Assembly: GCF_963853765.1 (NCBI RefSeq)
Contig: NC_088859.1
Coordinates: 1,054,001-1,118,000 of the forward strand
DNA length: 64,000 nt
Reading direction: 5' to 3'
Source: Magallana gigas
Taxonomy: Eukaryota
Shown here: piece by piece, positions 271-48,601 of the stretch
How positions within the stretch are numbered: the stretch's first letter is position 1
Layout of the letters: every line of letters begins with the position of its first letter
Position numbers and translations under genes: made by a program
The notes under the pieces: model-generated
The model's database searches: none
What the model saw: the letters and a program-made list of their open reading frames with translations, nothing else
What the model was told of the DNA's origin: nothing

Positions 271-3226
271 GACGATTCAATATTACTGGAGGAAGGGGTC
301 AGGTGTTGTAAAAACATTTAAACGGGAAACAGCTTAAGCAAGATGCCAGTATAGACAAATCTAAGCTTCGTAAAATCATGCTACTATACAGACTTCTCAG
401 CTAGTAAAACTACTCGAAAACCTTCGAAACTCAGCCTCTGTATCCACAGCCAGACGCCTCAGCTTTGACGACCCATAGGACTACACAGACAACGAATTGC
501 TTAACCTGACAGGACTGAAAAAGCACCAGTTTGAGGAGCTAGTTGAAATGGTTACAACCCTAAAGAAGTCTAAGTTAAGGTCGCCCAGACTTGCTATTGG
601 AGTGCTGCTGGGGAAACTCAGAACAGGGCTCTCTCAGGGGTATACAATTATTATACAATTATATCCAAACAGAGGTGTTTTACATGCAAATAAACCAACT
701 TTTTAGTGTAAGACAACTTTACTCCCACCCCCACTCAACCCCACATACACACTTACCCATCATTATTACATATTTACTTTAAAATTTGCTGAAAAGTAAA
801 TATATAATCATCAATGTTTGCATCCAGGTTCTCTGAGCATAAACCAAATATAATACATAATGGGAACCTTTGTCATTCACATTGTAATAGCGACACAAAT
901 AGAAAGTTGGTTTACATCGGCTTTTTAATCTATTGTTCTATCATAAAACAAATTATGGTTATTTGTGCATTAGTAAAAATTAATGTAAATATGTGTGCAT
1001 GAGAGGGTAAATAAACATATTTTGTATGCATTAAAATTCTAAATTTTTTATTAATAAGCATTAAATAAAAAGTTTTGAAATGTTTAGGACAAACATTGAT
1101 ATCTTTTTTCCATTTTAGATTTATTGGAACACTCTTTGGTAAGAAGCAAAGACAGATTTCCCGATATATCAAACAAGCCAGAGAGGCCCTTTGTTCGGGA
1201 TTTGTCTCCTCGTATTTTGGTTCCTATTACATTTCCAGAAATACCATTATTGAAGAACATACAACATACAACGCAACTCAAATATTTGGCCACTTTTTGT
1301 CAGACTCTGTAATATCCATCATGCATGGAACGTACAAATACATTCAAAAAATCACAATTACGCATTTCAACGTCAATGTTTCGGTATGCACAAACACAGA
1401 TCCTTAGTAAAACCAATAGTAGTTACAGCAACTGACGGCTACATCATTATAGTATTCTGGGCCCATTTTTTGCCAATGGTCGAAACAACGACGCCTCAAT
1501 TCGGAAATATATGGTCAAATCAAATGATGAGAACTTGTTACAGTTGTTTAATTAAAAAAGATGATATTCTTATTCTCGACAGAGGTTTTCGTGACTCCAT
1601 AGAGTTTTTAAACGATATCGGGTTTTGTACGAAATTCCCTGCATTTCTTGGTCCTAAAGAAAAACAAATCAGTGCAAGGGAGGGGAATGAATCAAGACTC
1701 GTAACAAAGATTAGATGGGCTGTTGAGTCGGTCAATGCTAGGTTGAAGACATGAAAGTTCTTGGACAAAGTAGTATGTAACAAAGATATTCCCCATCTTA
1801 AGCTAGCAAGGGACAGTTTCGGATAAAGTACCCGGTCAATATTTTTGTAAAATTAAGAGTTGCTGTACTTGAAGGCTTATGAGTGTTTCTAAAATTCATG
1901 AAATGATTTTTAATGATTATCATTAGTTAGAGGGGTGTCGCTTGTTAAAATTGATATGCAATATGTAAGCCCCATATATTAGGTACTTGGTATCAGAAGT
2001 AAAATGCGAAACCTGCGGCTATGACTGTTGTGTTGACTTTACACAGAGAAATTGCAAGTTACAGACAAGAGGTAAAATAACACGAAAAGTAGGTGGATGG
2101 GACATTGTAAACTATACACCGGTAAGTTTCTGACATGTGATAGTGCAACATGCACGCGGTACGGAAGGTCAACCCTCTGCAGGGAATTAGCTGGGGGAGG
2201 TCTAAAAAGCTGAAAAATCATGAAAAATTAGCAAAATATGAAAGGGTCAAAATCTCATAAAACCAGTAAGTAGAGAATTTTACAGGTTTTGACTATATAG
2301 TCTGTCCCAAGTTATTGCTGTCATCAATTTTTAATGATTTTTAATAAAAATACACATACCTGTGAAAGAAATACCATTGAAATCGATGCATGAAAGGGAA
2401 TATATCCAAGATATCTTCATTGAACAATTATCCCTTTTCACTCATAAAATTTCAAAGGAACAAAAACAATTTTCTTACGGAGATTTATCATGGAAAATGT
2501 GTACATCTTTTCTCCATTCGGAATACATCGCTATTTATTAACGTTATCATCTGGACTTAATAATGGCTGATGCAATGCAAAATCCCCGTAGACTTTCAAT
2601 TTTGGGATGTGTATTGAAACCTGAAGCGGTAGACGGGGCGTTTCAAAACAGCTAATCTGGACATTTTTCATATTTGTGGATGAACGTAGTTTGAGCAAAA
2701 AGGTATTTATGATTATCGAAATATCAAGCAAAAAGTCGTGGAAGCAAAAACTCGGGACAGACTGAGAGTACATGTATAGTAATTTTCTTCAGAAATTGAT
2801 TGGCCTTATAAAGGGTGAATTAAAGGTATTTGTGCTGAATAGGACCTGAGGAAATTCTAGTTACAGAGTTCCGAAGACATGCATCCCTTGGCTACAATGA
2901 ATTGTATAAAAAACATGTTCCCTGCCACCTTAAAAAATACATTAATATAGTAGCAGCAATTTTTGCAATAGTTTTTGTGCCCCATTACAGCAATCCCGTG
3001 ACAACGATTGCGACATAGCCCGTAAGATGGTCGAACGCTCTAAAATGGCAAACCTTGTCCAACAGGAGGTCGAATCTCAGAGACATTTAAAGAAACATTT
3101 AAGTCATTGGCAGAGCATGGAATCCATTGATTTCACACTCCCACGGTTAGGTGACGACTACCTTAGATCCCTAACATTTGGGGTGTATCAACTGTAACAG
3201 GCACCGCATAATGCCGACCAACATTT
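271..3226 (+). pseudogene. ISL2EU / PIF-Harbinger-type DDE (DDE_Tnp_4-like) transposase relic, with one intron and one TE insertion
   Basis: Pieces in order: SFDDP*DYTDNELLNLTGLKKHQFEEL..KLRTGLSQG; intron 640-1118; FIGTLFG..SIMHGTYKYIQK; HKHRSLVKPIVVTATDGYII; LDRGFRD; RWAVESVNARLKT*KFLDKVVCNKDIPHL; insertion 1802-2929; KKYINIVAAI..LRSLTFGVYQL*QA. Several stops and frameshifts. Confidence 0.85.
1802..2929. mobile_element. Non-autonomous DNA transposon with TTAA target duplication (Kolobok/piggyBac-like), nested in the transposase
   Basis: TTAA at 1798-1801 and 2930-2933. Imperfect TIRs gctagcaagggaca / rc ggtggcagggaaca. Removing it rejoins the transposase as NKDIPHL|KKYINIV. Confidence 0.75.
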
Positions 3227-3555
3227 AAGGTAATGATCCATACGTCATAAAACAACGTCTGACGTAATTCACGCGTTATTACGTCTTTTCCGTGCCCGAT
3301 CTAATCGAGACCTAACGCTAAAAGGTGTACATGTGTTTCAAAACAAAAAAATCAAGCTGACCTAGAAATTAATTCAAAACAAATCTATTAAAAATCCTGA
3401 AAACTGCAATCAATTAGCCTATTACTCAGCGAAATGAGAAATTGACTGGGTTGTGTCGATTGAGTACTCGTTTTGAAAATACATACCTCATCTTTTTGTA
3501 CAATAAAAACACAACAACAAAGAATGAAGAGGATTTTGTGAATTCATTATATTCT

Positions 3556-6500
3556 CTAGTTGAAACACAAGTTAGAAACCTCATTCCTTGTGAGGATTAC
3601 TGTATCCGACAGATGTGAAAGTGACTGGTTCTAAAGATAAAACAATTCAAATAATTATTGATATTGTAGGTAATACATTAGGAAAATACAAATATAATAC
3701 AATATAAAATATTCCAACCTGTAGAATGTTCCTCACAAAAGAAAGGAGATAAACGCCACAGTCGTAGCTGTTTTTCTGTTGTGGGACCTACCATTGAAAA
3801 TAATAAAAAGGTGAGTATGTAAGAATGAGTTTTTTTATACAATGATGCTATTCCAAAGCTTTGGCAAGCTAATAGATAACACATACCATCACAGATCATG
3901 TGGGATTTTTTAAATCACTTGTTGAAGCAACTTTTTATGAGAATCTAAAAATCCATTTCATGAAGCTTTTTGAGACATCATATCCATGGAAATATGTACA
4001 AATAAATAATGACCTCACCGTTGTGTAATATCAAACATTAATTTGAATGGTAATATCCCCGACATATTGTTGCAAACAAAGAATAAATGCTAGTAAATCA
4101 TTGGGGTTTCTTTCTCACCCCCCCCCCCTTTCAAATTTAAATGTATTTCATAAGCAAGAAAGAGCTATCTCTTGGGATTAACAATGAACAAAACCTTTAT
4201 AACCAGTTCACCTCAGTGTGCTGAACAATAACAGTATTTGCAGCCCGTCCTGCCTTCTCCAATTCCTTTTCAAAGAACCTAAAAACATACCTATATATTT
4301 TTAAACATATACTTGGATATATATTTGTCAGACTCACTTTCTATATTGCACAAAAAAGGAATGAAAAGTTCACAAGTGTTAAACGTACACTCTCAATGAT
4401 GATTCCTCATCAACATAGCTCCCACTCATGGAACATATGATTGAGATCGAACCAAAATCTCCTGCCATTACAGACAAAGCACCAAGATACCAATGTAACC
4501 TGCCAATCAAGTGTGAAAAGGAAATTGTTTGTGTATCAACTTCTGATTAAAATTCTCTCTCCTCTTTTTATTACCATAAATAAAAACTGTTAACACAATA
4601 TGCAATAGATTCACTCCCTTACATGTTACTGATAGGAACAAGGATGATTGTTCCATCCTTCAGCTCAATGTTGGTCAAAGTGTCCTCTACTCCGACATAA
4701 TTGCACCCACTCATGTTTAGTGGTCTCCTGTTCCTGTTTGAAGAAGACACTTATTTGATGTAAGCATTCTTATCTGTATGTCATTTATTCATATTTACAT
4801 TTAGTGTATATTTCCCCTTATGTTTGCATTGGAAATCTGCAACGTTCAATTTTCTATGAATGCACTTTGCTAATTAATAAGCCGTGAGCACATCATAAAC
4901 GTTTACATGTGTTTTGAGTATATCTATTTTTGTATTGAGTATATTTATTTTTGTAAGATTAAATGAAACATTGTTCAAATTTACTTCACCAATTTGATAT
5001 GTACTTTTTAAAATAAATGTTAAATAATATTTACTCCTTAATGAACAATTTTTCTCTCCAAAGTTCCTGGCACTATATTTTTAGTCGAGGAAGTGAACTA
5101 AATATTGTATACAGGGAAATATTCACCCCCGTTTTATTTTCACTCATTTCGACCCTCGTTGTCAGCAAGCGAATTCAAGACTGGACGAATTACATACTCA
5201 TATTGTCAAAACCATATGCAAGTGATGAAGGGCAAAAATAACATGGGGTGAAAATAACCCTGTAAACAGTAACATGTTGATATGGCTGTTCCATGTATGT
5301 TTCATACCCTGACTGAAAGCTAATATAATGGCTTTATATCAACAATATTTATATATTCTTTACAAATATACATCAGTATAAAAATAAATATAAGCATTGA
5401 ATGCTTTATTTTGGATGTCGTCAGTGCTGTAACACACCAAGCTGTGCAGACAAATTATCATACGACGCTAACAGGCAGTATTTGGTTTGTCTGCACTGAT
5501 TGGTGTGTTACAGGACCGACATCAAAAAATAAGCATTCAATGCTGAAATGAGTGTGTTGTTCTATTTTGTACTGGTAATCATATGTTATAATTTTAAAAT
5601 GAATCAATACTTACAGCTTGCCTTTCACCAAAAGCTTTTGGGCAAATGCCGTGTTCAGAATAAACACATTCTCTGTGCCCAAGTCTTCTTTCATTCTTCT
5701 GTATCAAAGTGAATGAATTCTATTTTTAAAAGCAAAGGAACTCCACTTTTGGGGGAAAACAATAATATACATATATATACATGGTTTCCAGTAGGATATG
5801 AGAACATTTTCTCTTTATTTAAGATAAAAGAGCATTGGTACCTTGTCGCAACATCAATGATGGCATCTGTCAACCATCTCATTGGGTGGAGGGACACCAT
5901 GTCAACCTCATAAAGATCTATCCCCATTTCAATTCTATGACTACAGGTATAAGCAAAACATTTTAATGCTGGAACATCAAAACAAACCAGAAAAGAAAGG
6001 ATTTTCAAACCAATCAGCAAATCAATCCATATTTTTAAAGGAAATGGAGGTATGAGCATAAACAGTATGAGCCACGCTTTGTTGAAGGTGAATTAATTTA
6101 ATTCAACTTTTGTTAAATAGTATCCATGTTCATCACTTAAGGTCTAACAGCATACACACTAGTTGTACTCATATTAAAGAAGTTACAGAAATGAAGACAG
6201 TATAGCCAAGATAAACACAAATATCCCGCAAATTTAGCAAAAGATGGAATCCAAATCATAAAGAAAACATAGAAAAAGTTGAACTAGGAAACAATTCATT
6301 CAATTCATCAGATTAGAATAAAAAGAAAAAAACCAAAAAAAAAAAGTATATAAGTGGAAAGAGAACAAATAAGAACAGAATATTTATTTCTCACACATTA
6401 TCCATTCCAGGAAGTCTGAGCTTCTCAATAACTTGAGGTGTGGGGTTTGGAGTGTTGCACCCTTCATTAAGTGGAAGAAAATTGTCAAAAGTCAACCAAA

Positions 6501-9500
6501 ACATGGCATTTCATATGCAAAAGAATGCACTAAAGGATAGAGAAACATACATATGACGCCCTTTAGATAAAACAAATATCTGATGTGACATGAAGTACAA
6601 AAGAACCATTTCATTGCAAACATGTATTAAATCATGAACACAATTTGCTAATGAAATAGAACTTCTGTTAATAAAAAACCAATTAAAAATTCACCTGCTA
6701 GAAAAGAAACAGGAACCAATAGGTTATAACAGCCTTCACTCCTAACAATCTCCAATGTCTGCTTTGCAGAGGGAACACAAGGACACGGAGGGAAAGAAAT
6801 AACCTGCTTATTCTCATGTAGTTTGATATTGATTTCTAATGCCCCTGCCAGGAGAAGCAATCTGAACCGATCTAAATTCACCAAGCAAAAGCAAGTATAA
6901 TCATACCAGAAAGAAAAGAAACTATGGAATTACATGTACAACATATCAAAAACTTCAAAGCCATTTTGATTACCGGTACTTCTATTACCATTGGAGTTAG
7001 TCATGGCATCTTCAAAACATTTCAGCATGTCATCTCCTCCACTAATCCCAAGGAGATCACAGATAACCTGAGGCTTCACTCCTCCACTGACTACACGCTC
7101 ATACTATCAAAAAGGATTAAGTACAAACTGTGAACACCTTAAAATAATTCTTTCAAAATTTGAGAATATTCAAGGTATTTGGCAATCTGATTCAAACCTG
7201 CTGGGCATAGTGGCCCATATGAAGAATTCCTTGAACTCTCATAAGCAGATCTAGATGGGCTTGGCTGCAGGGGGCATACATGTTAAAGCATTCCCTGATA
7301 CTTTTACATTGTAAAAGCTTTGCAAAGCCTTCTCGATTCACACCACTTGAATACCGGTAATTGAGAAGAAATAATAATTTTTATATAAACTGACAATAAT
7401 TTTTCAAACCTTCGGAAAGTGTTTTGATTTAGAAAAACATACCCAGGTTGAACCAAGGCCACTGGAAACGTTTTATGAGCCATAAAGGCCTCTCGCAGGG
7501 TCTTAGTTGATGTGTGTGTTGCAACAACTGATGCAACAACCTCCGGAGAAGGCATTTTGTCCATAAGTTGCTGCACATCATTAAACTTGCACTGAATAAA
7601 ATATTAGCAAATACATTTTACAGAAACACACATCAATTTCTTGTAACATGACTGCATATCAACATTAATGTACATTAACAGGTATTTTCTTAGATGCAAG
7701 CTACATGCTTATGACGAAAAACCAGGGACACGCGATTTGTTCACAGTATGTAAGGAGTAAGCTAATGCTGAGAAAAATGTCACAGAAATTTAATGGAATC
7801 ACAAGGGTAAAACATGATAACCCCATCTCCTTTAGAGAAGGGTTATAAAAATAGGCAAATTTATTATTTAGAATGACTTGCTATATCCAACTTAAATTGA
7901 AGTTCAAAAATTACTGTAATATGAAATTGGTTGATACATGAACAAATCTTCTGAGAAGCCCTTTAAGCTTCAGAGAAAATAATCACATTTTAATACCAAA
8001 TTGATATATCATTTAACTTAATAACCTTGTGGTTTATTATTAAAGTGAATGTACCAGATACTACTAGCACTTTATTAGGGTCTTCCGTTTTCAACGGAAG
8101 ACCCTCTTGTTATTCTATTGTTTCTTTTTCATTATTATTATTTTTCTTTTTCTTTATTTTTCTGACTTTTTCAAAGCTTAATATCTCAAAAAGTTTTCAA
8201 CAGATTTACATGAAACTTTCAGGGATTATAAAGCATTATTGTGCCTCAAAGTTTTAAAATTTTCAATTACAACCTCACTTCCGTTTTTACGTTACGTCAA
8301 TTTTTTAATTTTAAAAAAGTAATTTTGTCCAGGGCGTTTTTCAAAAACGGTTCAAGATAAAGACTTGGAATTTTCTGTGTTGAAGCAATGATCGTTTTTA
8401 TTTGGACATAAGACTGGAAATTAGTTTCCGTCACTTCCGGTCTAAACCGGAAGTGTTTTAAAATTTTCGAATTTTCGAATTTTTCGTTTTAATTTCAAAT
8501 GATTACGAGGTTTGTAGAGTTGGTCATGCTGAATACGAAACTGAAATCCGTTTGAAAATCGGACGATGCATTACAGAGATATCGGGGTTTAAAAATTTGA
8601 TTTTTCCGGAAATTTTGTTTCCGCGTCCTTGGTTTAAAAAATAGCGTAATGTTAATGGTAAAATTAACTCGTACCAAAAATAATTGTTAAGTCGTACTTG
8701 AACAATTCGGATTTTTTTTGTTAAGTCGTTCTTGAAATCGGAAAGGTGTTTGTTAAGTCGTACTTAAAATCATTCGGATTTTGTTAAGTCGTACCAGGAA
8801 TAATTCGATTTTTTCATCTTTTTATTTTAGTTACTCTTGTTATTGGTTTAAGAGCTCTGCTTCTTACAGAAACTTCCAGCTTTACTTCCGATATTAACGG
8901 AAGACCCACTCGTTGCTTTGCAACGAGCTTTGCTCTAGTTTATCTTCTTATTACCTTGTTCATAAGGTTCTCTACCTTGTAGGATGAAATGCTTTCCTGC
9001 ATAAATAGGATGAAAGCATGAAATAAAAGATAACACATAAATAAAGTACACACATTTGTTGAAAAAGGGAAATAATTACTCGTAATAAATATGAAAGTAC
9101 CTTCTCAAGAAAAGCACTGCCATCGTTGACGTTACAGGCAGAAGGCTGCTCTGGGACATCCTTCGTTGGTACAAAGAAATTCCAAATGTGTGATTTGAAA
9201 TAATTATTCAATGATTCATAAATGAAAATAGTGGTATGTATTGTTGCATACGCATTGGTGATTGCCTCTATTACTTATCACCACTGATGGACATCTGTTG
9301 ATATTAATGTGGTGAAAAGTAAACAATGTTTTAAAAATATTTATAAAGGTTTACTTTTTAAAATTCCCAGCAAGATTCACACTCATAAATTTGAACTCAT
9401 GACTTAAAGATTGTAGTTGACCCTCTAACCCATTAAGCTATACTGTTATATGACAATTTGGGAAAGAAAACACTTATAAAATTGCACTCTACTTCATCAT

Positions 9501-10164
9501 TTATCATAATAAATAGTCCGTCACAATTTTGAGATGTCTCATACCGACTTAAAGAAAATTAACATAACTTACTATGCAGTGAAACACCTGGAAGCTGTTG
9601 AAAATCTTTCTTAAATCCTCTGCTCCCAACTTTCTATGATTGACTAAAAACAATCTTAATGGTTAGTTCTCTGATATGCTTCCTTATGCACATAGCTCAC
9701 CTTCAACATGTCTCAATTGAATAACAGTAATTGCATTGCCTGTGAAATTTTTCCCTCTAAAAAATTTGATTTTTGAACAAGTATAGGAAAATCTGAATTA
9801 ACTAACTTCAAAATGAATATATAAATGTGTGTGTGTTTATTACATCCGACAATTTCATTTCTTTAGCAGCGTTTCCCTAGAAACGATAAATATAATAATT
9901 ACGGTATATAATTTTGTCAACTCATGCAAGATGGAAATAAGCAGCTTATTACATTTAGCAGTTCTGTCTCTTTTAGATGTGAATTGTTAATGCTTAAAAT
10001 CGTCATCAAATGTATAACTCTCTACCATTGTTCTTTTGTTTAATATGAATGCTCTGTTTGTGTCATCCTTACTTGTTCTATTAGGATCCTGAAAAGGAAT
10101 GCTCGCTGGCCATCCCTCTGGTCTTGGACCTTTCCAAATGTTCTTTCCTTTTTGACACAAATTA
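3556..10164 (-). CDS. C-terminal 17 exons of a protein with an Nrf1/Ewg-like motif, possible OTU-like domain and Ulp1/SENP (peptidase C48) domain
   Basis: Phase-consistent GT-AG exons: 10164-10073, 9739-9701, 9643-9573, 9160-9101, 8996-8976, 7570-7443, 7294-7198, 7103-6974, 6871-6695, 6461-6395, 5940-5842, 5698-5615, 4733-4623, 4499-4391, 4277-4212, 3787-3719, 3630-3556 (1495 nt, no internal stop). Ulp1 motifs: DMVSLHPMRWLTDAIID, NVFILNTAFAQKL, IILVPISNMLHWYL, VPQQKNSYDCGVY. The 4391 donor (gtgtac) is weak. Confidence 0.8.
5105..5272. mobile_element. MITE with TACAGGG..CCCTGTA-type inverted ends; same family as 32250-32458
   Basis: Inverted termini tacagggaaatattcacccc / ggggtgaaaataaccctgta. 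A clearly related copy lies in a Raptor intron. Confidence 0.65.
5393..5544. mobile_element. Palindromic MITE, AGCATTGAAT-ended family
   Basis: Starts agcattgaatgc and ends gcattcaatgct, with an internal imperfect palindrome. Same termini as 44526-44682. Confidence 0.6.
8071..8940 (+). mobile_element. Helentron-associated non-autonomous element (HINE) in an intron
   Basis: 5' T-run plus hairpin gggtcttccgttttcaacggaagaccc, internal ttaagtcgtac repeats, and 3' ggaagaccc followed by the palindrome ctcgttgctttgcaacgag and a T-rich end. Confidence 0.8.
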
Positions 10165-10249
10165 CTGTTGTTAATATCATAATAAGAGATACTTGAAATA
10201 TATTCTAAATCTTCAAACAATTGCCATTGAGCAATACACCTTGTACAAT

Positions 10250-13200
10250 CCCTTTGAGAATCAATGGCAGGATTTTTCTCAGAATGGCTTCCGGGGTCTC
10301 TACTGCATTTAATGAAAGAAGATTCTTCCATTCCTCCTCAGCCGTAGGAACTTTGTATTCTAGTTGTATCAATGAAATGTGATCAACAAACATCGCAAAT
10401 CTAGCATGGGTGTATGCGCTGAGACTGATGGACTGATGCATTGAGTGACAGCTCTATTGGGTGTAATAGGTTAACAATCTAAATTGTGAGTTGCAGTTTA
10501 TGAAACAAGCATTTTCAGTGGCCGTTTAAGTACCCGCCCACTTTTACCTGCTTGCATGGTATTGATAATTTATGAATCAACTGCCAGCTGTGTCAATTAA
10601 CTCTGTATCAAGACTACAAAAACTAAATGACTGCAATACTTGACGAAGAGTTTTCACAATAATCGCTTCTTGTTTTATATGGTGTAAACAATTGTCAAGA
10701 ACAATGTTTAAATGGGTTCCCCATTTCATTTTTCAGCAAAATGCTTCATTGATCAATTCAAAATCTATGACAGAAATGTGCTCAATTTTGGACTAAACTG
10801 TGATTAATCTGATTTTGTAACTCAGTCTGTAAAAGTATTAATTTTACTACATGTAGCTCTATATTCATCAGTCTGAGACAATATTTTTTTTCACCACTGA
10901 TGCTGATGCTTTACTTGCCATGGACTTTCTCTCAAACATGCTAATCGACCTTGGATTGTAAAATTCATGTGCAGATCAAGTGTCCAATTTACATGCATAT
11001 AAACAAACCACACTTCTTCATTTTACAAAGCAGGTGATATGTTTCAAAGATTTATTGTAAGCATATGAGTAAAGACATATGCTATAAAATGTCTAATGAA
11101 TTTCAAGGTGTGTCAACCTGAATTTTTCCGTGGATCTACATTTTGCAGCAAGCTTTTTGTGAGGAAAGACAGTCAGTTCAACTCATGCTATACACCACAT
11201 ATAGTACATAAATAATGTTATTGGATAAGAGAAGAACAATCTGTGACTTTAATCTATATGCGCCCATCCCTGCTTTTAGAGAACTTTTTCTTTATTTTCA
11301 CGAGCATTATTTACACATGAATGTAAACATTGCCCCGTTTGTTCTAAAGTAACTCTGTATGTAATTTACATGTATAGCTTGCAAGTACAAATTTATCATA
11401 AGTTTTCTTTCTCCGGCATTTGTTTCCACGTGTTAGCATCATGTTCTCAACATGCACTTGATAAATGGATGAGTCTATATAAATGCGCCAATCAGAATCT
11501 CTGTTGCAAATCACAATTGAAATACACACTCATTAGAAAGTAGTCAACACTCAACACAATGCTACGTACATCAGCCTTAGCGTGTACTTTCATGCTAGAT
11601 TTGTGATAAAAGGGCATGGTCATGACTTTGATCAATGTTATTTTTCAGTTTTTGTTGTTTGTAATGTTTTAGAAATACAATTCTGATGATTAACTAAAAT
11701 TTGTGTGTCAGTCGTAGAGTTATAAGCAAGATACAGAGCTCACAGTTCTTTGTTTTGTAAATATGGCTCGTGCTGTTTTTGTTTAAATTAGTTCAATTTA
11801 CAGGTAAAAGTTATATTTTAAGCTTATTTTTTTCTATTCTAATAAATCATAATGATAAATAAATAGTACCTAGCAATTATCACATTCATTTTGGGTCTTA
11901 AACTGGAATTTTTGATTCAACATTCAGAATGTTAACAAAAAACACAACATATACTTCATTTACATGACAAAGAACTGTACCATCTTTTCAATCAATTATT
12001 TATTTTTTTTACCTTTAGCTGATAATAACATGTCAGCATGATGTGCCATACTGGCTGATGCCATCTGGGTTGAGAAATCTCCACAGATGTCTCGCAACCA
12101 TGGAGAAACTAAATGAATATTTTATAAAACATTTTGTGACTGCATATTGAGAGGTATACACTAATACTGTAACTGTGCATTCAAATCTGCAGCAGGAGTA
12201 ATATTTTCCAAAACTCTGTGTCAGTTTGAAGCACATATGGGTTGTTGCTTTCACATTGCACACACGATTTCACAACAGATGGTCATGGATTTTCCATACA
12301 TGTACATGTATCTTGCAAAACCTGATGATTTCATTGATGTCATTTTATATAATTATGACTTTTTGAACCAGGCAATTAAGTTAAATGTATATCTTTACAT
12401 AACATTGACTTATAAAATTGAAATTTGCAAAATGCTTTTTGTAGGTAAAATCTTATTCCAAAAACACTTACCGTATATCTATAAAAATATTCATATTAGG
12501 TTTTAATTCATTACAATGCTATAGCTGTGTGCTAAAGATGTGTGCAAAGTTAAACGATCCCAAGATCTATGGTTTTTAATCAATCTTGCCCACAACCATT
12601 TAAAACCAATATAATATAGGCTAGCACAGAAACACTAACACACCTACAACATAGTAAGAGATGTTCTTCCTGTTTGTGAGAGGAGTAATACTGCTATGTA
12701 TGTGTCAAACACAAATACTAAACCTTGACCACAAAATTATCACAAACCATTACCATGTCCCTCTGTTTTTCCATTGAGTGTGTGCAAAAACACTACTGGA
12801 ACATCAGGTTCCTCTTCCATGAATTCTCTGATCTACAATTGTGGATTTGTTTTAGTTTACATTAATAATTCCTTTTTAAAAACAAAAACACAAAGAATTG
12901 TTGAGCAAAACTAACACATTAAATGATGACAAAACAAACTACCGGTAGAACTGTCCTAATGGGACTAATACCCCCGCAAGGCTAATTTCAAATGGGACAA
13001 ATAATTGAATTGAATAATAAAGGTTTGGAACACATACAAATAAAAAAAAATTTGTAGAATTGTTAAAAGAAAAATTAGTTAACAAAGAAATATTTAAAAT
13101 CAAAGTCAGAATAACCCCTCCCTTTGCAGTAAATGGAAATACAGGTAGCCAAGCAATGCTCTTCTGTTGATAAAACTTTGAATATCTTTCGAATAAGAGT

Positions 13201-14723
13201 CTTGACAGATGCAGTTAGCTGTTTCAAATTTTCCAAACTTTCTCCTATAGTACAATGGAACTCCATATCAGAAAATTGATCCTATAAGACTATGATTTTC
13301 TTTGATGAGCTTGTTAAATTAAAAATACTCTTAAAACATTACCAAAATTACCACACTATGTATAAATATGTAAAAAAGAAAATTTAATATTACCGGGTAC
13401 AAACAATTTTAAAATTCCAAAACACTACAATCATATCAGTAATTTTGAATTTCATTTAAATTAATGCCCTATAGGGTCACTTCAATTTACTTGACTAATA
13501 AATTTAAACAACTTCTGAAAATAGTTAACTAACAGGGGACAAAAAAAATCTATGAAACAATTTTGCATCAGATAGGAGTTTTTTTTTGGAATCCTTGATA
13601 AAGGAGATCATGCTCTGTATCTGAAGATGTGACCTGTTCGAAAAAACAAAATTCATCTAGCATTTAAAACCTTTGACTCAGATTCAAAATTCAAGCCTGT
13701 CAGTAATTAAAGTAAGGACCAGTAATATTAAGATATAATCATTGAAGGGCACCAGCTCCAAAAACTTTAACCAGCTCTTTAAACCTTAACCTCCTCCAGC
13801 ATCCGTAACCTATGGCTCAGATTCAGCATTCAAGCACATCAGTATCATCAGACGCACCATCCTTGCAAGTTTGGTGAAGTTAGGACCAGTAATAACTAAG
13901 GTATAATCATTAGAGTGCACCTGCTCGATAAACTTTAACCAGCTTTTAAAACTTTAACCTCATCCAGCATCCAAACCTTTGGATCAGATTAAGCATTCAA
14001 ACATGTCAGGTGCATCAGCATCATAAGACACACCATCCATGCAAGTCTGGTGAGCTTAGAACGCATAATAACTTACAAATGGCTATCAAAGGGCACCTGC
14101 ACCAAAAACTTTAACCTGCTCCAAAAATCTTAACCTCCTCCAGCATCTGAAATTCATGGCTCAGGTCTTTCAAGTTCATTTGTAGGTCCAGATGCATCAT
14201 CCATGCAAATTTGGTGAAGATAGGACGAGTAACAACTTAGATACAGCACCTACAACAAAAACCTTAACCATGCAGGTCCGAACGGTGACGCTGGTGGTTA
14301 AGCATAAGCTGCCCCCGACTTTGTCTTGGTGAGCTAAAAACTGCTTCAAAATTTTGGCACAGATAAACAGGAAGTTGACATCAAATTTGTTTTGAAATGA
14401 ATCCCTCTATTTGGCATGCCAAAACATAGTGTCCTAAATTTCAACTATCTGTGAAGTGAAAAATGCAAAGAAAATATGTTAAGGACAGACAGAGACACAC
14501 CAAAGGGTAAAACAGTGTACTACCGTAGTACTTCTCCTTAGGGGCGAGGGTTTAATTCGAGATTTTAATTACAGCTTGCATATACTATTTGAACTACCAG
14601 TACTACAGATATTTAAAAATTGTGTATAAATATCATGCATTTAGACTGCTTGGTTACCTTATTTGACAGTCTTTTTAGTTTTTCTCTCCGTCGTCTTTTG
14701 ATCTTCTCTTCCTCTTTTCTAAC
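10250..14723 (-). CDS. Probable 5' exons of the same gene; not fully joinable, possibly decaying
   Basis: Exon-like AG..GT blocks: 14723-14658 (VRKEEEKIKRRRREKLKRLSNK, NLS-like), 13281-13116 (DQFSDMEFHC..CKGR), ~12830-12755 (IREFMEEEPDVPVVFLHTLNGKTEGH), ~12330-12180 (SCVQCESNN), ~10430-10250 (TPEAILRKILPLILKG). Phases do not all match and some blocks contain stops. Confidence 0.45.
13600..14340 (-). mobile_element. HINE carrying about 3-4 satellite-like units of about 170-180 bp
   Basis: The end reads ttttagctcaccaagacaaagtcggggg on the minus strand. The block aaactttaacc..cttaacctcctccagcatc recurs near 13760, 13930 and 14105. Confidence 0.65.
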
Positions 14724-17069
14724 CTAAGAGACAAACAATATTTAAACTAAAATTTCTTAAGTCTTAGTGTAGTCTGTTTGTGAAATATATTTTTTTGTGT
14801 CATAAAAAAAATAAAAAACGTATATATAGTATAATAGCACTATTATACTATATATACTATTATTTTTTTTTTTTTGCACAGATTGTCTCAAAACCCTGTG
14901 GATATTCAGGAGATCTTTGTGCATGTGTTTATATGCAATTATTGTCAAAATAATAATGCACATAATTATGTATTTAAAAAAGCAACAAATGACACAAATG
15001 CTTAAGTAGCTAAACACAGGTTCACTTAAAATCCAGGGGGTTTTTCTCTTGGAAAAAGCATGATGGGTATGGATTTTCTTGCTATTTCATGCGGTATACA
15101 TGAAAATTATTTTTTTTTAATTTCTCAATTGCATGATATAGGGGTTTATCTTTCTAATACATGAAAAAAGTATGTAGAAAATATTTAAAAAATTAATTTT
15201 GTGAGACTCTAAAATAAAGGGAGGTAACTCCAAAAACATCCGGATTTTACGCGTGCAGAATTTCATGATTTTTTTAGAGGGGAATATAGCTCTTTTAAAA
15301 GCTGACAAATGTATCCTAAAAAAACTTTAAAACGATGCCTAAGGACTTGCTCTTGAATATGCATGAAAATTAAAATTGCTGATGTATTTGCATTCTGCTG
15401 TTAGGGGGAGCCTAAAATGCATGGGTGTACTGCATTTAGAGGCATTCTTTTGTCTATTTCTGTATAGCTGTTGTATTCACGCATTATTTCACACAGTTAA
15501 ATGCGTGAATCTCATACATATATTTCATTGAATTAATGAATCATTTTGCATATTGTTGCCTGTAATATGAACCTGTACATTCTGGGCTATTATTTCATTC
15601 ATTATTTGTTATAATCATGATATTATTTTTGTCCCCCGCCGCAACGCAGAGCGGGGACATAGAAATGCCGGGCGTCCAGAATTCTATTCTTGTTTTAAAT
15701 GTATATGCCCCCAGAGGGCCCTTGATTGGTGAATATATAAAGATATTGTTTTGAGTGGCAAATAAGTTCTAGCTTTAAGTAACGTGCATTATTTTTAAAT
15801 ATTTACAAAATTCACAATTTTATCTTTCTATTCATATCAGAGACATTAATAACAGAGATTGGCAGCTGATCGAAATCTTGCGAAATCCCCCGGTCCCTAT
15901 TGTAAAGTGTTCCCAGTTTAAATCATTATATCTTTCTAATATAAAACAATTATATCGAAATAAAAACAACTAAAACCTATTACCAAAACATTTAAAATAT
16001 TTTATTTTCATGAGTTTATGTCATATAAACAATATTAAAGGAAAAGTTTTAGGAGGCAGTTGGCTTCCTGTCGTCCGAGATTTCGCCGATGTTTTATAGC
16101 TGGCCAATATATTTTCTATATATTAAGGTAGTCCTATACTCGGCACTAAATGGGCTCAATCATTAAAAGCTTAGCTTTAAATGATAAACATACATTCTAG
16201 TTATACATATACAAAAGAAAATATGCATGTTTACAAGCTAGTTTGTTTGTTATCACCTCTCAGACGGGTGTACCCCCTTGCGAAAATTATTGACAATTAT
16301 GAAATTTGCCAGACGTCCGTTTTTCCTAAATATAATTACCGTACCAATTTTGGGAAAATTAGAACTGCACATTCATAATAGAGTTTAAAAAATTTATTTA
16401 AGCCATATTTCATCAATAATTTTGCGCAAATTTTTGTAAGTAAGTACGCTTTATGGACCTGATGTTATTGTATCAAAATAGAATACAAAAAATGCAATGC
16501 TAGTATCGCGTTTGGTAATTTTTTTTTTACTATTTTATGGACTCAAACTTAAATTTATGGTGTTTATTCAGATTGACATCTTAGAAAAAAGATCTGTCAA
16601 CAATGTTAGATATCATTTAAACATTAATTAATTGACGATTTATTAAATTCGTAATAGCTTCTGCCTCTAAATTTAAACCGATTTTAGTAAAAGAAAAAGA
16701 AAAATTCGGCAAGGGGGGGGGGGGGGGGGCATCAAAACAAACAAGATATAAGCATACCTGAGATCCTGGTTAATCAGAAACTTCGTTTTTCATTTTACTT
16801 TAACAGAATCGAGTTTCTTAACATTAATTATTTCTATCTCTCATAGAATACATATATTACCGTTCTAATTGCTTATTATTGCCATTGTTTACAACAGCGA
16901 TGTAGAGAAAAATCAATACTGGGTATCTAAAACGCTTTGTAAAAGTCGAACCAATATTGTAAAATCTGTATTATGACGTAATGTGATACTCGGACTACTT
17001 TAATTTGATTTTACAATTTTTTCTTTCAAAAATGTCTAAAACCTATGCACACTTTTCATTAAAACAATA

Positions 17070-17215
17070 CTGGCGTGCAACCAGTTCTCGCCGAGTACCA
17101 TTTCTCGCCAGTACATTGTGACCTCATTTTTCGTCTATAATTTGATGTGTTTATAAAATGACGTCACAATGTACTGGCAAGAAATAGTAATCGGCGAGAA
17201 CTGGTCGCACGCCAG
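17070..17215. mobile_element. Palindromic MITE with TA flanks
   Basis: TA|ctggcgtgcaaccagttctcgccga ... tcggcgagaactggtcgcacgccag|TA; nearly the whole element folds back. Confidence 0.7.
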
Positions 17216-17648
17216 TATAGTTTTAGTTAAAGATCATTATCTCAGTTCACTAAAATGTAGTTCACAAAGTAAGGTTGGTCCCGTACCATTTTTCAACAAC
17301 AAAACATGCTAATGGCGGAGTTGCCAATCTCTGTTGATATATAGATATGTATGTAACATGTTTTTACAATTTAAATTCAAACGGGTCAGTTTTGCTTGTC
17401 CCTCATCTAAAAACATCCTTATAACGTTACATATAAAACTGTGTTTTGCACCCTAATTGTATTTTGTTGCATCTTAAAATATTTATTAAAACTATTAATT
17501 ATGATTTTCCTAGGTAACTGGATACGTTCTTTCTTGGAGAAAACATACCATAGGAATTGGGTACGTTTTCTCTTAAGTAGGTGTTCTCTAGCAATCTTTT
17601 AATCTTGCTTATGGGGAGGAAACACTGCGACTGATTTGATGTCTCCAC

Positions 17649-17704
17649 TGAAGGTCATAGTGATTATGTCGGTCATTAGACCGACATAATCACAATGACC
17701 TTCA
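17649..17704. repeat. 56-bp near-perfect hairpin
   Basis: tgaaggtcat-agtgattatgtcggtc-atta-gaccgacataatcac-aatgaccttca. Confidence 0.75.
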
Positions 17705-18199
17705 ATCAGAACAATTATTAATCAATCATTATGTATATGGTTGAAATATGTTCATACCTACGATATAGATTAAAATGATTGCAAACATACTTTCTGACAC
17801 AAGTATAGGACTAAAAAATAATTACGGGGTCAATTATGGATACAAGATTTCCAAATTAACTCGAATTTCCTATTCCTATTAACTCAATAAACTTGACAAA
17901 AAAGTGTATACCACTTCAGAATAATAACTAAATAAAAAATATCATAATATATATGAAGTAGGAGTATAATATGGATCCTAAAACTTTAAACTATACAATC
18001 CAAAATCATGAAAAACGTACAAATTTGAATTTAGGGTCACCGTCTTGCTTATCCTCCATATTGTTTTCTTTTTTTATTAACTGCAGTACTAATTGGCGCA
18101 TGCGTATTGGGAACCTTTGGCCCGGTTACAGGGATATTTTGAGTTCGGTTAAATCCCAATAACCGGGACTATAAATACCTCAACATATGCTTGAGATAT

Positions 18200-22800: not shown

Positions 22801-23453
22801 TTAATTTAGATATTAAAGTAAATTTCATCTATTTTGACTTGGAGATTTATTCACTGTACATTAAATCTAGGCCTCACTAATATTATTTCTTGTTCGTCGT
22901 ACCCCGTGTGCTCGAATTTAAATTAAACTATACAAATAATGTAATTATTAATTTGCCACATCCAGAAAATTCTGTGCTGTTTTCTGTTTTTATTTCGCTC
23001 TAGTTTTCACATTTTAGATAGTTTTGATTTATTAATCAGAAACAAGTAGAAAAAATATAATTGTCCACACAAATTTATTTATGGACCGCCCAAAAATTTT
23101 GACTACAAAAATTAATACTTTGTTATTTAATCGCTCACCCGGTCATACCTTTTTTCACTGGATGTCCGACAAACAAGAAATTAAATTGGTTCGGCCCTAT
23201 GAAACTATAATACCCATGAATATATATATAAATATAATTATATAAAGTTTGATATTAAAAAAATATGAAAAGCTAAAATCAGATTCAGTCTGGTAAAATT
23301 TTAATGTTATTTTCTGAAAGTATATCTCCTCAGTACTTGGTATTGAGAGTATACCATGAATGGCATTATCATTTTTACAATATATGTTCTCTGATGCTAA
23401 CACTACCTAGTTATGATATACTTAGACCATGTTAACCAATGTTTGTGTTACAG

Positions 23454-26400: not shown

Positions 26401-27079
26401 TATGTAGTACAATATATTTAATTTATCTATAGTGAATAATTAATCAGTGTGTCACAACCATGTGATTGTAGTTGAACTGGAGGAAGAAGTGGAGGAGGCT
26501 AGACAGGAAGTGGAGGAGACCCATCAGGCCCTGGAGAGGAGCATTAGGGTGGTAGAGGAAACCACACAGGAAGTGGTGGAGTCCCGCCAAAAATACAGGT
26601 CTCTCAAACAGAGGCTGCAGCAGAGGGATCAGGCCTTACAGCAGAAGGATCAAGCCTTACAGCAGAAAGATCAAGCTTTACAGCAACACCAGCAAGCCTT
26701 ACAGCAACACCAGCAAGCCTTACAGCAGAAGGATCAGGCCTTACAGCAGAAGGATCAGGCCTTACAGCAGAAGGACAGAATGCTGGAGCAGAAGGACAGA
26801 ATAATTCAACAAGAGAGACAGAGGGTGAGAGAGCTGGAGCAGAACCCTGAGGGCGAGTTCCAGAGACGTCTACGAGAGATGGAGGAAGAGATCCGTCGAC
26901 TGTCTGCCAAGTCGAATCGGGCTGTGTGTAAAATCTGTAGGGTGGAGGAGGTTCAGGTGTCATTCTCACCTTGTAATCACCTGGTCTCTTGTGAGGGGTG
27001 TGTGCCTAGTCTCCCTCAGAACAAGTGCCCCATGTGTAGGAAAACAATTCAGGGTACAGTCAAGATGATTTTAGCTTGA
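23454..27079 (+). CDS. Transmembrane / coiled-coil / C3HC4 (IAP-type) RING protein, putative E3 ubiquitin ligase, about 491 aa
   Basis: Exons 23454-24069, 25079-25279, 26031-26081, 26472-27079, all phase-1 GT-AG junctions, 1476 nt open. Hydrophobic N-terminal segments, QQKDQAL heptads, and a terminal CKICRVEEVQVSFSPCNHLVSCEGC..CPMCRKTI RING. An upstream exon is possible because AG immediately precedes the ATG. Confidence 0.88.
26618..26812 (+). repeat. Coding 21-nt tandem repeat (QQKDQAL/QQHQQAL heptads, about 9 copies)
   Basis: cagcagaaggatcaggcctta-type units in frame in the last exon. Confidence 0.9.
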
Positions 27080-48448: not shown

Positions 48449-48601
48449 NNNNNNNNNNNNNNNNNNNNNNNNNNNNNNNNNNNNNNNNNNNNNNNNNNNN
48501 NNNNNNNNNNNNNNNNNNNNNNNNNNNNNNNNNNNNNNNNNNNNNNNNNNNNNNNNNNNNNNNNNNNNNNNNNNNNNNNNNNNNNNNNNNNNNNNNNNNN
48601 N
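48449..48601. other. Assembly gap (153 N)
   Basis: Run of N. Confidence 1.

What the first reader, a model, noticed from the sequence alone, without database searches (positions are those of the whole stretch)
3556..14723. Unrecognised multi-exon gene joining an Nrf1/Ewg-like DNA-binding motif to a Ulp1/SENP protease
Seen: 17 small exons, most invisible in the ORF track, splice into one stop-free ORF of about 498 codons ending in a full C48 protease fold (WLTD..ID, ILVPI..HW, PQQKNSYDCG). Upstream, EAILRKILPLILK..KGKNIWKGPRPEGWPASIPFQDPN resembles the Nrf1/erect-wing motif QAQLRAFIPEMLK..WG...KPIWWPEDIPW, and there is a basic NLS-like exon. Established: true SENPs lack such a domain, whereas Ulp1 domains are carried as cargo by Zisupton/KDZ, Mutator and CACTA-type transposons. 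Inference: a chromatin-targeted deSUMOylase, either the accessory gene of a large intron-rich transposon or a domesticated derivative. No transposase or matching TIR pair was found around it.
Basis: partly seen in the sequence, partly recalled or inferred. Interest (0 to 1): 0.78.

Follow-up and report, generated by a model that had tools for sequence, protein, structure and literature searches.

The report
Mobile oyster NRF1-like Ulp1-protease gene
This is a real oyster gene of 21 small exons that joins a DNA-binding domain shaped like that of the transcription factor NRF1 to a SUMO-type (Ulp1) protease; it is conserved between oyster genera, yet in the Pacific oyster the whole gene has recently been copied to several chromosomes like a mobile element.

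Summary
The exons and motifs are real, on the minus strand.

RefSeq does not miss it. It splits it into two adjacent "uncharacterized" genes: 189 or 258 aa, then a 299 or 399 aa Peptidase_C48 protein.

Comparison with Ostrea edulis and a third lineage favours one ORF. All exons are colinear, splice sites and phases match, and a stop-free path runs through a conserved 14-codon mini-exon. The C48 half has no conserved start codon. All three thirds are under purifying selection (pN about 0.24, pS about 0.75).

Pfam and HMMER do not detect NRF1. However, an AlphaFold model of exons 5-7 has the NRF1 DNA-binding domain as its best match in two fold searches (Z 6.5, 81 of 105 residues).

Window 18181-3497 is 99.7-99.9% identical to copies on two other chromosomes. 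Four different flanks join at one sharp 5' end, which is conserved in O. edulis. No transposase, TIR or TSD was found, and no RNA reads covered the decisive junction.

Elsewhere in this genome the scan noted NRF1-like accessory genes on KDZ/Zisupton transposons. I could not link those to this one.

The parts
3497..18181 (-). Repeat unit shared at 99.5-99.9% identity with two other M. gigas chromosomes (L001 on OY970752.1, L006 on OY970747.1). It holds the whole gene, from 80 nt upstream of the first ATG to 59 nt after the stop codon.
   Evidence: blastn. Three-way MAFFT: 16 to 41 substitutions per 13.8 kb.
18168..18181 (-). Sharp 5' end of the unit, GAGGTATTTATAGT (TATA-like). Four unrelated M. 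gigas flanks join here. The 17 nt GAGGTATTTATAGTCCC are identical in O. edulis.
18121..18167 (-). Subterminal inverted repeat CCCGGTTATTGGGAT / ATCCCTGTAACCGGG. It is kept in O. edulis with one compensatory change.
   Evidence: I11; DNA fold -11.3 kcal/mol, z -2.2
18096..18103 (-). GCATGCGC, the core of the NRF1 consensus GCGCATGCGC. It overlaps the first ATG and is the only copy in each of L001, L006 and O. edulis L009.
   Evidence: 2 in 64 kb, 0.28 expected. Consensus taken from PMC10810270.
18021..18101 (-). Exon 1 (ATG at 18101 as in XP_065934448.1, or at 18059 as in XP_065924572.1).
   Evidence: The exon 1-2 splice is seen in RNA-type contig L007.
14658..14723 (-). Exon 2: a basic helix (…KIKRRRREKLKR…), the most conserved exon (95% aa identity to O. 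edulis, pN 0.02).
12754..12832 (-). Exon 3
12013..12108 (-). Exon 4
10240..10359 (-).
10073..10147 (-). Exon 6 (KNIWKGPRPEGWPASIPFQDPNRT): the loop part of the NRF1-like domain.
9573..9643 (-). Exon 7 (…LGAEDLRKIF…HCI): end of the NRF1-like domain. Its donor ATA|GTAAGT lies at the same place in O. edulis and L008.
9101..9160 (-). Exon 8 (DVPEQ…AFLEK). The RefSeq 258-aa model reads through its donor to a stop.
8955..8996 (-). Mini-exon 8b (ESISSYKVENLMNK), in phase 0 on both sides. It links the two RefSeq genes and is conserved in O. edulis and L008. The RefSeq 399-aa model starts at its internal ATG, which is Leu in the other two lineages.
7443..7591 (-). Exon 9 (CKFND…)
7198..7264 (-). Exon 9b (…AHLDLL…)
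6989..7103 (-). Exon 10. The RefSeq 299-aa model starts at the internal ATG at 7028.
6695..6871 (-). Exon 11
6395..6461 (-). Exon 11b (…RLPGM…)
5842..5940 (-). Exon 12: start of the C48 domain (WLTD motif).
5615..5698 (-). Exon 13 (C48)
4623..4733 (-). Exon 14 (C48, ILVPI)
4389..4499 (-). Exon 15 (C48): catalytic His in LHWYLG. The canonical Asp position holds Ser; an acidic residue lies 12 residues after the His.
4212..4278 (-). Exon 16 (C48)
3719..3787 (-). Exon 17 (C48): oxyanion Gln and catalytic Cys in PQQKNSYDCG.
   Evidence: (Pfam E 2e-5 on this exon alone)
3556..3630 (-). Exon 18 (the 21st exon), with stop codon TAG at 3558-3556.

Best explanation
Window 18181-3497 (minus strand) is one copy of a recently multiplied, gene-sized repeat unit of the Pacific oyster. 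Its cargo is a single conserved 21-exon gene of about 612-626 aa.

The protein has four parts in order:
1. A strongly conserved basic helix (exon 2).
2. A roughly 90-residue domain with the fold of the NRF1 DNA-binding domain (exons 5-7).
3. A conserved linker of about 200 residues with no known family (exons 8-11b).
4. A complete Ulp1/SENP-type C48 cysteine-protease domain (exons 12-18).

Shown here: the exon structure, the C48 membership, conservation and purifying selection of all three parts between Magallana and Ostrea, an intact ORF in all three M. gigas copies, and multi-locus copies with one sharp, inter-genus conserved 5' end.

Inferred: the protein is made as one chain. The NRF1-like domain and basic helix bring the protease to specific DNA sites. 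One candidate site is the GCATGCGC motif 80 nt inside its own 5' end. There the protease would remove SUMO or a related modifier from chromatin proteins, which could keep the unit's promoter active or help it spread.

How the unit is copied is not known.
For: Gene structure:
- RefSeq proteins P0004 and P0014 and the MetaClust protein P0039 map to the window with unique GT-AG junctions.

One ORF rather than two:
- Exon 8, mini-exon 8b and exon 9 join in phase 0 without a stop in M. gigas, O. edulis and the L008 lineage.
- The ATG that RefSeq uses to start the C48 protein is Leu in the other two lineages.
- In O. edulis, 17 exons have AG and GT at exactly the homologous positions, and a stop-free 21-exon ORF of about 617 aa can be assembled.
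- O. edulis exons 9-11b are conserved but belong to no NCBI model.
- The UniRef model P0040 already joins …AFLEK to CKFND….

Selection over 549 aligned codons: 61% aa identity, pN 0.24, pS 0.75. By part, pN/pS values are N-terminal 0.20/0.79, linker 0.30/0.75, C48 0.23/0.72.

C48: Pfam PF02902 at E 3.3e-15 covering profile positions 1-200 of 217. Solved relatives are Ulp1, SENP7, SENP5, SENP1 and SENP2.

NRF1 fold:
- AlphaFold model residues 100-185 have pLDDT 73-84.
- The top 3 Foldseek hits among 350,542 chains are NRF1.
- VIA-align gives Z 6.5, rmsd 3.5 Å, 81 of 105 residues and 21% identity against 8k3d_A. NRF1 ranks 1 and 2 of 48,161 chains.

Mobility:
- Identical 5' boundary with four different flanks.
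- Copies on OY970752.1 and OY970747.1 differ from the window by 0.1-0.3%.
- The 5' end, its inverted repeat and GCATGCGC are conserved in O. edulis, while introns are unalignable.

Transcription: exon 1 is spliced to exon 2 in Logan contig L007.
Against: - No RNA read or contig shows the exon 8/8b/9 junctions. Two polyA runs, sampled at about 1 read in 100, had zero reads on any exon between 4550 and 10500. RNA-library contigs lay unspliced at low depth, which looks like genomic DNA.
- NCBI splits the locus into two genes in both species.
- No fused protein is among 1.84 billion representatives.
- No sequence method links the N-terminal part to NRF1: Pfam found none, and phmmer and hmmsearch against PDB did not reach NRF1 even at E 10.
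- The fold match is middling. The next unrelated hit has Z 5.2, and the model comes from a shallow alignment with whole-model pLDDT of 59.
- The canonical Asp of the C48 triad aligns to Ser.
- No transposase, TIR, TSD or 3' end was found.
- L001 and L006 stay alike for at least 5.4 kb beyond the point where the window copy ends. The true unit may therefore be larger and this copy truncated.
Confidence: 0.6

Rival explanations
1. There are two separate, tightly linked genes, as RefSeq annotates. One is a small NRF1-like protein (189-258 aa) that ends in exon 8 or 8b. The other is an independent Ulp1-type protease that starts downstream. They travel together but are not one polypeptide, or the fused form is only a minor isoform.
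For: NCBI models are split in M. gigas (189+299 aa and 258+399 aa) and in O. edulis (236+199 aa). The region around the distal donor of exon 8b is conserved at DNA level. The representative library holds no fused protein. No spliced reads were found.
Against: The three NCBI splits end and start at different places, which looks like thin evidence rather than a real boundary. The start codon of the 399-aa model is not conserved (Leu in O. edulis and L008). Exons 9-11b are conserved under purifying selection from their acceptor sites onward, yet in O. edulis they belong to no model. The phase-0, stop-free path is conserved in three lineages.
Confidence: 0.17
2. This is an ordinary host gene family, not a mobile element. 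The copies arose by segmental or ectopic duplication, and the conserved 5' block is simply the core promoter (TATA box plus a regulatory palindrome).
For: No transposase, TIR or TSD was found. The conserved 5' block begins with a TATA-like motif about 80 nt before the ATG. O. edulis has one annotated copy. The gene is under purifying selection.
Against: Four independent junctions fall at exactly the same nucleotide with unrelated flanks. The copies lie on different chromosomes at 99.7-99.9% identity, with exons and introns equally diverged. One copy sits inside another gene's range. The O. edulis locus has different neighbours.
Confidence: 0.15
3. The NRF1 resemblance is coincidental. Exons 5-7 encode a lineage-specific small helical domain with some other role, such as protein binding, and the protease is not DNA-targeted.
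For: All profile and sequence tests for NRF1 failed. Z 6.5 lies within the range the tool itself calls common for helical models. The alignment used for modelling is shallow.
Against: NRF1 was named before the search, and it then came first among 350,542 and among 48,161 chains by two different methods. The match covers 81 of 105 residues at 21-24% identity, against 8-10% for the next hits.
Confidence: 0.3
4. The protease domain is catalytically dead or repurposed (a pseudo-protease that only binds SUMO or another ubiquitin-like protein).
For: In HMMER's alignment to Ulp1, the catalytic Asp531 position is Ser. In that stretch a CSM motif is conserved between M. gigas and O. edulis where SENPs have DS(L/M).
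Against: His (HW), the oxyanion Gln and Cys (PQQxNSxDCG) are kept in both genera under purifying selection. An acidic residue (Asp in M. gigas, Glu in O. edulis) lies 12 and 9 residues after the His respectively and could complete the triad.
Confidence: 0.25

Closest known systems
NRF1 / Erect wing / P3A2 transcription factors (Pfam PF10491; structures 8K3D, 8K4L; PMC10810270)
   Same: The predicted fold of exons 5-7 superposes on the NRF1 DBD, residues 182-283 (Z 6.5, 81 residues). A basic helix precedes it, where NRF1 has its NLS and dimerisation region. A GCATGCGC motif, the core of the NRF1 site, lies in the unit's own 5' end.
   Different: There is no Pfam or HMMER similarity. Similarity to the NRF1 dimerisation domain was not shown. 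It was not established whether the three base-reading residues (R206, N242, R244) are kept. No NRF1 family member is known to carry a protease.
Ulp1/SENP SUMO proteases (MEROPS C48, Pfam PF02902)
   Same: The full-length C48 domain has His, the oxyanion Gln and Cys in place. Its best solved relatives are yeast Ulp1 and human SENP7, SENP5 and SENP1.
   Different: It is only distantly related (E 6e-6 to 1e-3), so it is not an orthologue of any SENP or of NEDP1. The canonical Asp position is not Asp. The N-terminal targeting region is a DNA-binding-type domain rather than the usual SIM or localisation regions.
   Same: A C48 protease travels with a multi-copy, recently active unit.
   Different: No transposase of any of these superfamilies, and no TIR or TSD, was found in the 14.7 kb unit or in the 5.4 kb beyond it in the longer copies. 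Here the protease gene is nearly the whole unit.
NRF1-like accessory genes on KDZ/Zisupton transposons noted elsewhere in this genome by this scan (s1-388572, s1-388608)
   Same: Same genome. Both involve an NRF1-like protein gene at the end of a mobile unit, and an NRF1-type motif in the unit's terminus.
   Different: No sequence similarity to those records could be shown (the look-up by sequence was blank). No SWIM/KDZ gene and no inverted terminal repeats are present here.

Membership tests
Peptidase C48 (Ulp1/SENP) | Pfam PF02902 match above the curated cut-off over most of the domain | tested here: met
   P0039 residues 235-414 match profile positions 1-200 of 217 at 56.9 bits (cut-off 20.7), E 3.3e-15. 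Every residue of P0039 from ESISSYK onward is encoded by the window.
Peptidase C48 (Ulp1/SENP) | Catalytic His and Cys, and the oxyanion-hole Gln | tested here: met
   LHWYLG aligns to Ulp1 SHWALG, and PQQKNSYDCG aligns to PQQPNGYDCG. Both are kept in O. edulis.
Peptidase C48 (Ulp1/SENP) | Catalytic Asp about 17 residues after the His | tested here: inconclusive
   HMMER aligns Ulp1 Asp531 to Ser. Asp (M. gigas) or Glu (O. edulis) lies 12 or 9 residues after the His.
Peptidase C48 (Ulp1/SENP) | Isopeptidase or processing activity on SUMO or another ubiquitin-like protein | not testable with these tools
   Needs an enzyme assay.
Orthologue of a canonical SENP1-3/5-8 | High sequence similarity to one SENP class | tested here: not met
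   The best PDB E-values are only 6e-6 (Ulp1), 7e-5 (SENP7), 4e-4 (SENP1) and 0.05 (SENP8).
NRF1/Ewg/P3A2 family | Pfam Nrf1_DNA-bind (PF10491) or any significant sequence match to NRF1 | tested here: not met
   No Pfam family on P0004, P0014 or P0034. phmmer against 1.84 billion proteins gave only oyster fragments. phmmer and two profiles against PDB sequences did not reach NRF1 at E 10.
NRF1/Ewg/P3A2 family | Fold of the DNA-binding domain (three helices plus the long linker2 loop, NRF1 residues 201-284) | tested here: met
   Model residues 101-187 against 8k3d_A residues 182-283: Z 6.5, rmsd 3.5 Å, 81 residues aligned, 21% identity. NRF1 ranks first in Foldseek and in the exhaustive VIA-align search. 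This is a predicted model with pLDDT 73-84 in this part.
NRF1/Ewg/P3A2 family | Base-reading residues R206, N242 and R244 (PMC10810270) | tested here: inconclusive
   No tool gave a residue-level alignment. From my memory of the NRF1 sequence (unverified), the Arg of the conserved LRK motif would match R206, and DPNRT would lie where N242-V-R244 is.
NRF1/Ewg/P3A2 family | N-terminal dimerisation domain (residues 54-172, MADS-like sheet) | tested here: inconclusive
   The model is low-confidence before residue 100. The 8k4l_B alignment over 113 residues has rmsd 12.7 Å.
Cut-and-paste DNA transposon (KDZ/Zisupton or other) | Transposase gene, terminal inverted repeats, target-site duplication | tested here: not met
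   No transposase-like ORF lies in the unit or in the 5.4 kb tail. No inverted copy of the 5' end was found in the window, L001, L006, L007 or L009. The window flanks show no duplication. The 3' end of the longer copies was out of reach.
Mobile or repeated element in general | Several near-identical copies at unrelated loci sharing a precise end | tested here: met
   Window, L001, L006 and L007 have four different flanks and one boundary. Copies differ by 0.1-0.3%.
Helitron | 5' TC, 3' CTRR with a nearby hairpin, insertion at A|T, Rep/Hel gene | tested here: not met
   On the opposite strand the sharp end reads …ATACCTC, and the host bases next to it vary. A hairpin-capable inverted repeat lies 14 nt from the end, but no Rep/Hel was seen.

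The most novel reading that the evidence does not exclude
This would be a self-contained mobile gene unit of oysters with no recognisable transposase. Its single product is a sequence-specific NRF1-type DNA binder fused to a Ulp1 protease. The protein would recognise the GCATGCGC and inverted-repeat block at the unit's own end and strip SUMO from chromatin there. That would make it an element-encoded, self-targeted anti-silencing enzyme, or even part of a new mobilisation mechanism.
Probability: 0.12. Interest if true: 0.85.

Novelty: new variant of a known kind. Interest (0 to 1): 0.62.

Why it matters
Ulp1-type proteases travel with several transposon superfamilies, but what they do there is an open question. 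In this gene the protease is joined to what looks like a sequence-specific DNA-binding domain, and a matching DNA motif sits in the unit's own conserved end. That makes one hypothesis directly testable: local removal of SUMO at the element's chromatin.

It would also be the first NRF1-type domain seen outside transcription factors proper.

On the practical side, RefSeq splits the gene in two in both oyster genera. In O. edulis six conserved exons (exons 9 to 11b) are left unannotated.

Tried and rejected
- Single-exon Pfam and PDB searches found only the Cys exon.
- Splice-score chaining with a fixed protein length gave many equally good models, so I dropped it in favour of database proteins.
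- RNA evidence: the one read-laying run (5951 letters) showed depth only on two intronic repeats, no GT-AG joints, and RNA-library contigs lying unspliced.
- The representative search with P0004 found no distant relatives.
- The first AlphaFold model, from close fragments only, was too poor to search with (pLDDT 55).
A tighter alignment gave L008.
- To reach the C48 protein despite the length window of the word search, I used a two-row alignment of P0014 with one exon piece. This worked.
- The joined 626-aa protein has no reference, so it was never sent to Pfam, structure prediction or the protein searches. P0014 and P0039 stood in for its two halves.
- The search for the unit's other end gave nothing: inverted copy of the 5' end, TSD, and ORFs across the 3' break.
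- Papers on Zisupton plus Ulp1, Nrf1_DNA-bind plus transposon, and Ulp1 plus transposon plus Crassostrea: none found.
The N run at 48449-48601 was left alone.

Full report
**What is there**

The window comes from an oyster: the runs that hold it are labelled oyster, and the database proteins are from Magallana gigas. Taken alone, only the exon carrying PQQKNSYDCG reaches significance in Pfam (Peptidase_C48, E 2e-5).

Chaining small open stretches through GT-AG pairs is easy in this 33% G+C DNA. My own chaining produced many different "ORFs" of any required length. A stop-free chain alone therefore proves little.

**Existing annotation**

A word search with the open stretch around exon 6 found XP_065924572.1 (P0004, 189 aa). 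Its 90% cluster holds XP_065934448.1 (P0014, 258 aa), which lies on another chromosome. P0004 maps to window exons at 18059, 14723, 12832, 12108, 10359, 10147 and 9643.

At both RefSeq loci a second gene follows on the same strand and carries Peptidase_C48. It is 299 aa at L001 and 399 aa at L006, and at L006 it starts only 9 nt after the stop codon of the first gene. The locus is therefore annotated, but as two genes.

**The full model**

A further search returned three useful proteins:
- P0039 (418 aa), which covers the whole downstream half.
- P0040, a UniRef model that already joins …AFLEK to CKFND….
- P0034, the Ostrea edulis homologue (LOC130054736, 62% identity).

Combining P0014 up to …AFLEK with P0039 from ESISSYK… gives 626 residues. 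The window encodes every one of them without a mismatch, in 21 exons. Each of the 20 introns has exactly one GT-AG solution.

The key piece is mini-exon 8b at 8996-8955, which is 14 codons long and in phase 0 on both sides. The RefSeq 258-aa model reads through the exon 8 donor to a stop. The 399-aa model starts at the ATG inside exon 8b.

**One gene or two**

Two more lineages settle most of this.

*L008.* This 5.9 kb contig, about 40-80% identical at protein level, carries exons 5, 6, 7, 8, 8b, 9, 10, 11, 11b and 12 in order. Similarity stops at the splice sites.

*O. edulis (L009).* It carries all 21 exons over 9 kb. Seventeen of them have AG and GT at exactly the homologous positions and phases, and a stop-free ORF of about 617 aa can be assembled.

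In both lineages exon 8 ends …LEK|GT, exon 8b follows in phase 0, and exon 9 starts in phase 0. The Met that RefSeq uses as the start in M. gigas is Leu in both. In O. edulis NCBI again splits the locus (236 aa plus 199 aa), at different points, and leaves exons 9-11b in no model.

Over 549 aligned codons the two genera share 61% of residues, with pN 0.24 and pS 0.75 (saturated). The ratio is similar in the N-terminal part (0.20/0.79), the linker (0.30/0.75) and the protease (0.23/0.72). I read this as one ORF, at about 0.8 on that point.

The missing piece is RNA. Two polyA runs, each sampled at about 13 million reads (roughly 1 in 100), gave no read on any exon between 4550 and 10500. RNA-library contigs lay unspliced at low depth. 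The only splice seen in public data is exon 1 to exon 2, in Logan contig L007.

**The protease**

P0039 matches Peptidase_C48 over profile positions 1-200 of 217 (E 3.3e-15). Its best solved relatives are yeast Ulp1 (E 6e-6) and SENP7, SENP5, SENP1 and SENP2. This is too distant for an ordinary SENP or NEDP1 orthologue.

His (LHWYLG), Gln and Cys (PQQKNSYDCG) are in place and are kept in O. edulis. The Asp of the canonical triad aligns to Ser. An Asp (M. gigas) or Glu (O. edulis) lies 12 or 9 residues after the His and may take its place. This is unresolved.

**The NRF1 question**

Sequence methods fail throughout:
- Pfam finds no family on P0004, P0014 or P0034.
- phmmer against 1.84 billion representatives finds only oyster fragments.
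- One phmmer search and two profile searches against PDB sequences do not reach NRF1 even at E 10.

A second AlphaFold model used an alignment that included O. edulis, L003 and L008. It has pLDDT 73-84 for residues 100-185, which correspond to exons 5-7.
- Foldseek's three best hits among 350,542 chains are NRF1 structures: 8k4l_A, 8k4l_B and 8k3d_A. For 8k3d_A the probability is 0.91, over 79 columns at 24% identity.
- VIA-align gives Z 6.5, rmsd 3.5 Å and 81 of 105 residues against 8k3d_A, aligned to NRF1 residues 182-283.
- In an exhaustive comparison with 48,161 chains, NRF1 ranks first and second. The next hit scores Z 5.2 at 8% identity.

The aligned range is the DBD defined in PMC10810270, residues 201-284. 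The scores are middling. However, NRF1 was the hypothesis named before the search. I put a true NRF1-type DBD at about 0.65-0.7.

**Mobility**

Window 18181-3497 aligns at 99.5-99.8% to L001 (OY970752.1) and L006 (OY970747.1), whose flanks are unrelated to the window and to each other. Counting substitutions only, the copies differ by 0.1-0.3%, equally in exons and introns, and all three keep the ORF.

Together with L007 there are four different flanks, all joining at GAGGTATTTATAGT. In O. edulis, DNA similarity to M. gigas begins at this same point, with 17 of 17 bases identical, although introns cannot be aligned.

Three features follow the end:
- An inverted repeat, kept in O. edulis with one compensatory change.
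- Then GCATGCGC, the core of the NRF1 site. It occurs twice in 64 kb (0.28 expected) and exactly once, at this position, in each of L001, L006 and L009.
- That motif overlaps the first ATG, so coding constraint may explain part of its conservation.

The window copy stops 59 nt after the stop codon. L001 and L006 run on together for at least 5.4 kb of repeats and a reverse-transcriptase remnant. I found no transposase, TIR, TSD or Rep/Hel, and I could not fetch more of the chromosomes. The unit is therefore mobile or recently copied, but its class and mechanism are unknown.

**Relation to earlier notes of this scan**

Notes s1-388572 and s1-388608 describe NRF1-like accessory genes on KDZ/Zisupton transposons in this genome, with NRF1-type motifs in their ends. 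That prompted the motif check above. Look-ups by sequence were blank, so no direct link is shown.

**Verdict**

Its interpretation is partly supported. This is a conserved DNA-binder-plus-Ulp1 gene that forms a recently multiplied unit. It is a new domain architecture within the known theme of transposon-associated Ulp1 proteases. The function remains inferred.

Noticed in passing
window 8076-8939: An 864-bp insertion private to this copy (absent from L001 and L006), lying 15 nt downstream of the exon 8b donor. PolyA RNA depth reaches about 1000x, and head-to-tail joints run 8940->8072, so it is an abundant, expressed repeat that might disturb splicing of this copy.
   Followed up: partly
window 4749-5544: A second repeat with RNA depth, inside the intron between exons 13 and 14 of the C48 part. 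It is present in all three copies and contains short inverted repeats (5388-5549).
   Followed up: no
window 1075-1754 (+): Two overlapping ORFs that look like a decayed PIF/Harbinger transposase (DDE_Tnp_4, E 3.8e-4, below Pfam's cut-off). They lie in the DNA that replaces the unit's continuation left of 3497.
   Followed up: partly
window 26447-27079 (+) and 23439-24113 (+): A 210-aa ORF with a Gln-rich coiled coil and a C-terminal RING of the IAP type, and a 224-aa ORF without any Pfam family.
   Followed up: no
L009 14965-16351 (O. edulis OX387708.1): Six conserved coding exons (9, 9b, 10, 11 and 11b, plus the start of 12 just beyond the interval) lie between the two NCBI gene models and belong to neither. 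This is an annotation gap in O. edulis.
   Followed up: yes
L007 389-2131 (Logan contig of SRR16709593): After the exon 1-exon 2 splice, the contig continues into sequence absent from the window, L001 and L006. That sequence has antisense ORFs, including a Cys/His-rich stretch, with no Pfam hit. It may be a chimeric transcript from a fourth copy.
   Followed up: partly
L001 13038-15318 and 19590-19772: The OY970752.1 copy carries a 2.28 kb insertion in intron 1 and a 180 bp insertion in intron 4, plus two amino-acid changes (Pro to His in exon 8, Ala to Val in exon 9b).
   Followed up: partly
L006 24450-25220: Satellite-like tandem units of about 240 bp in the tail shared by L001 and L006, followed by a reverse-transcriptase remnant at 26485-26934.
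   Followed up: no
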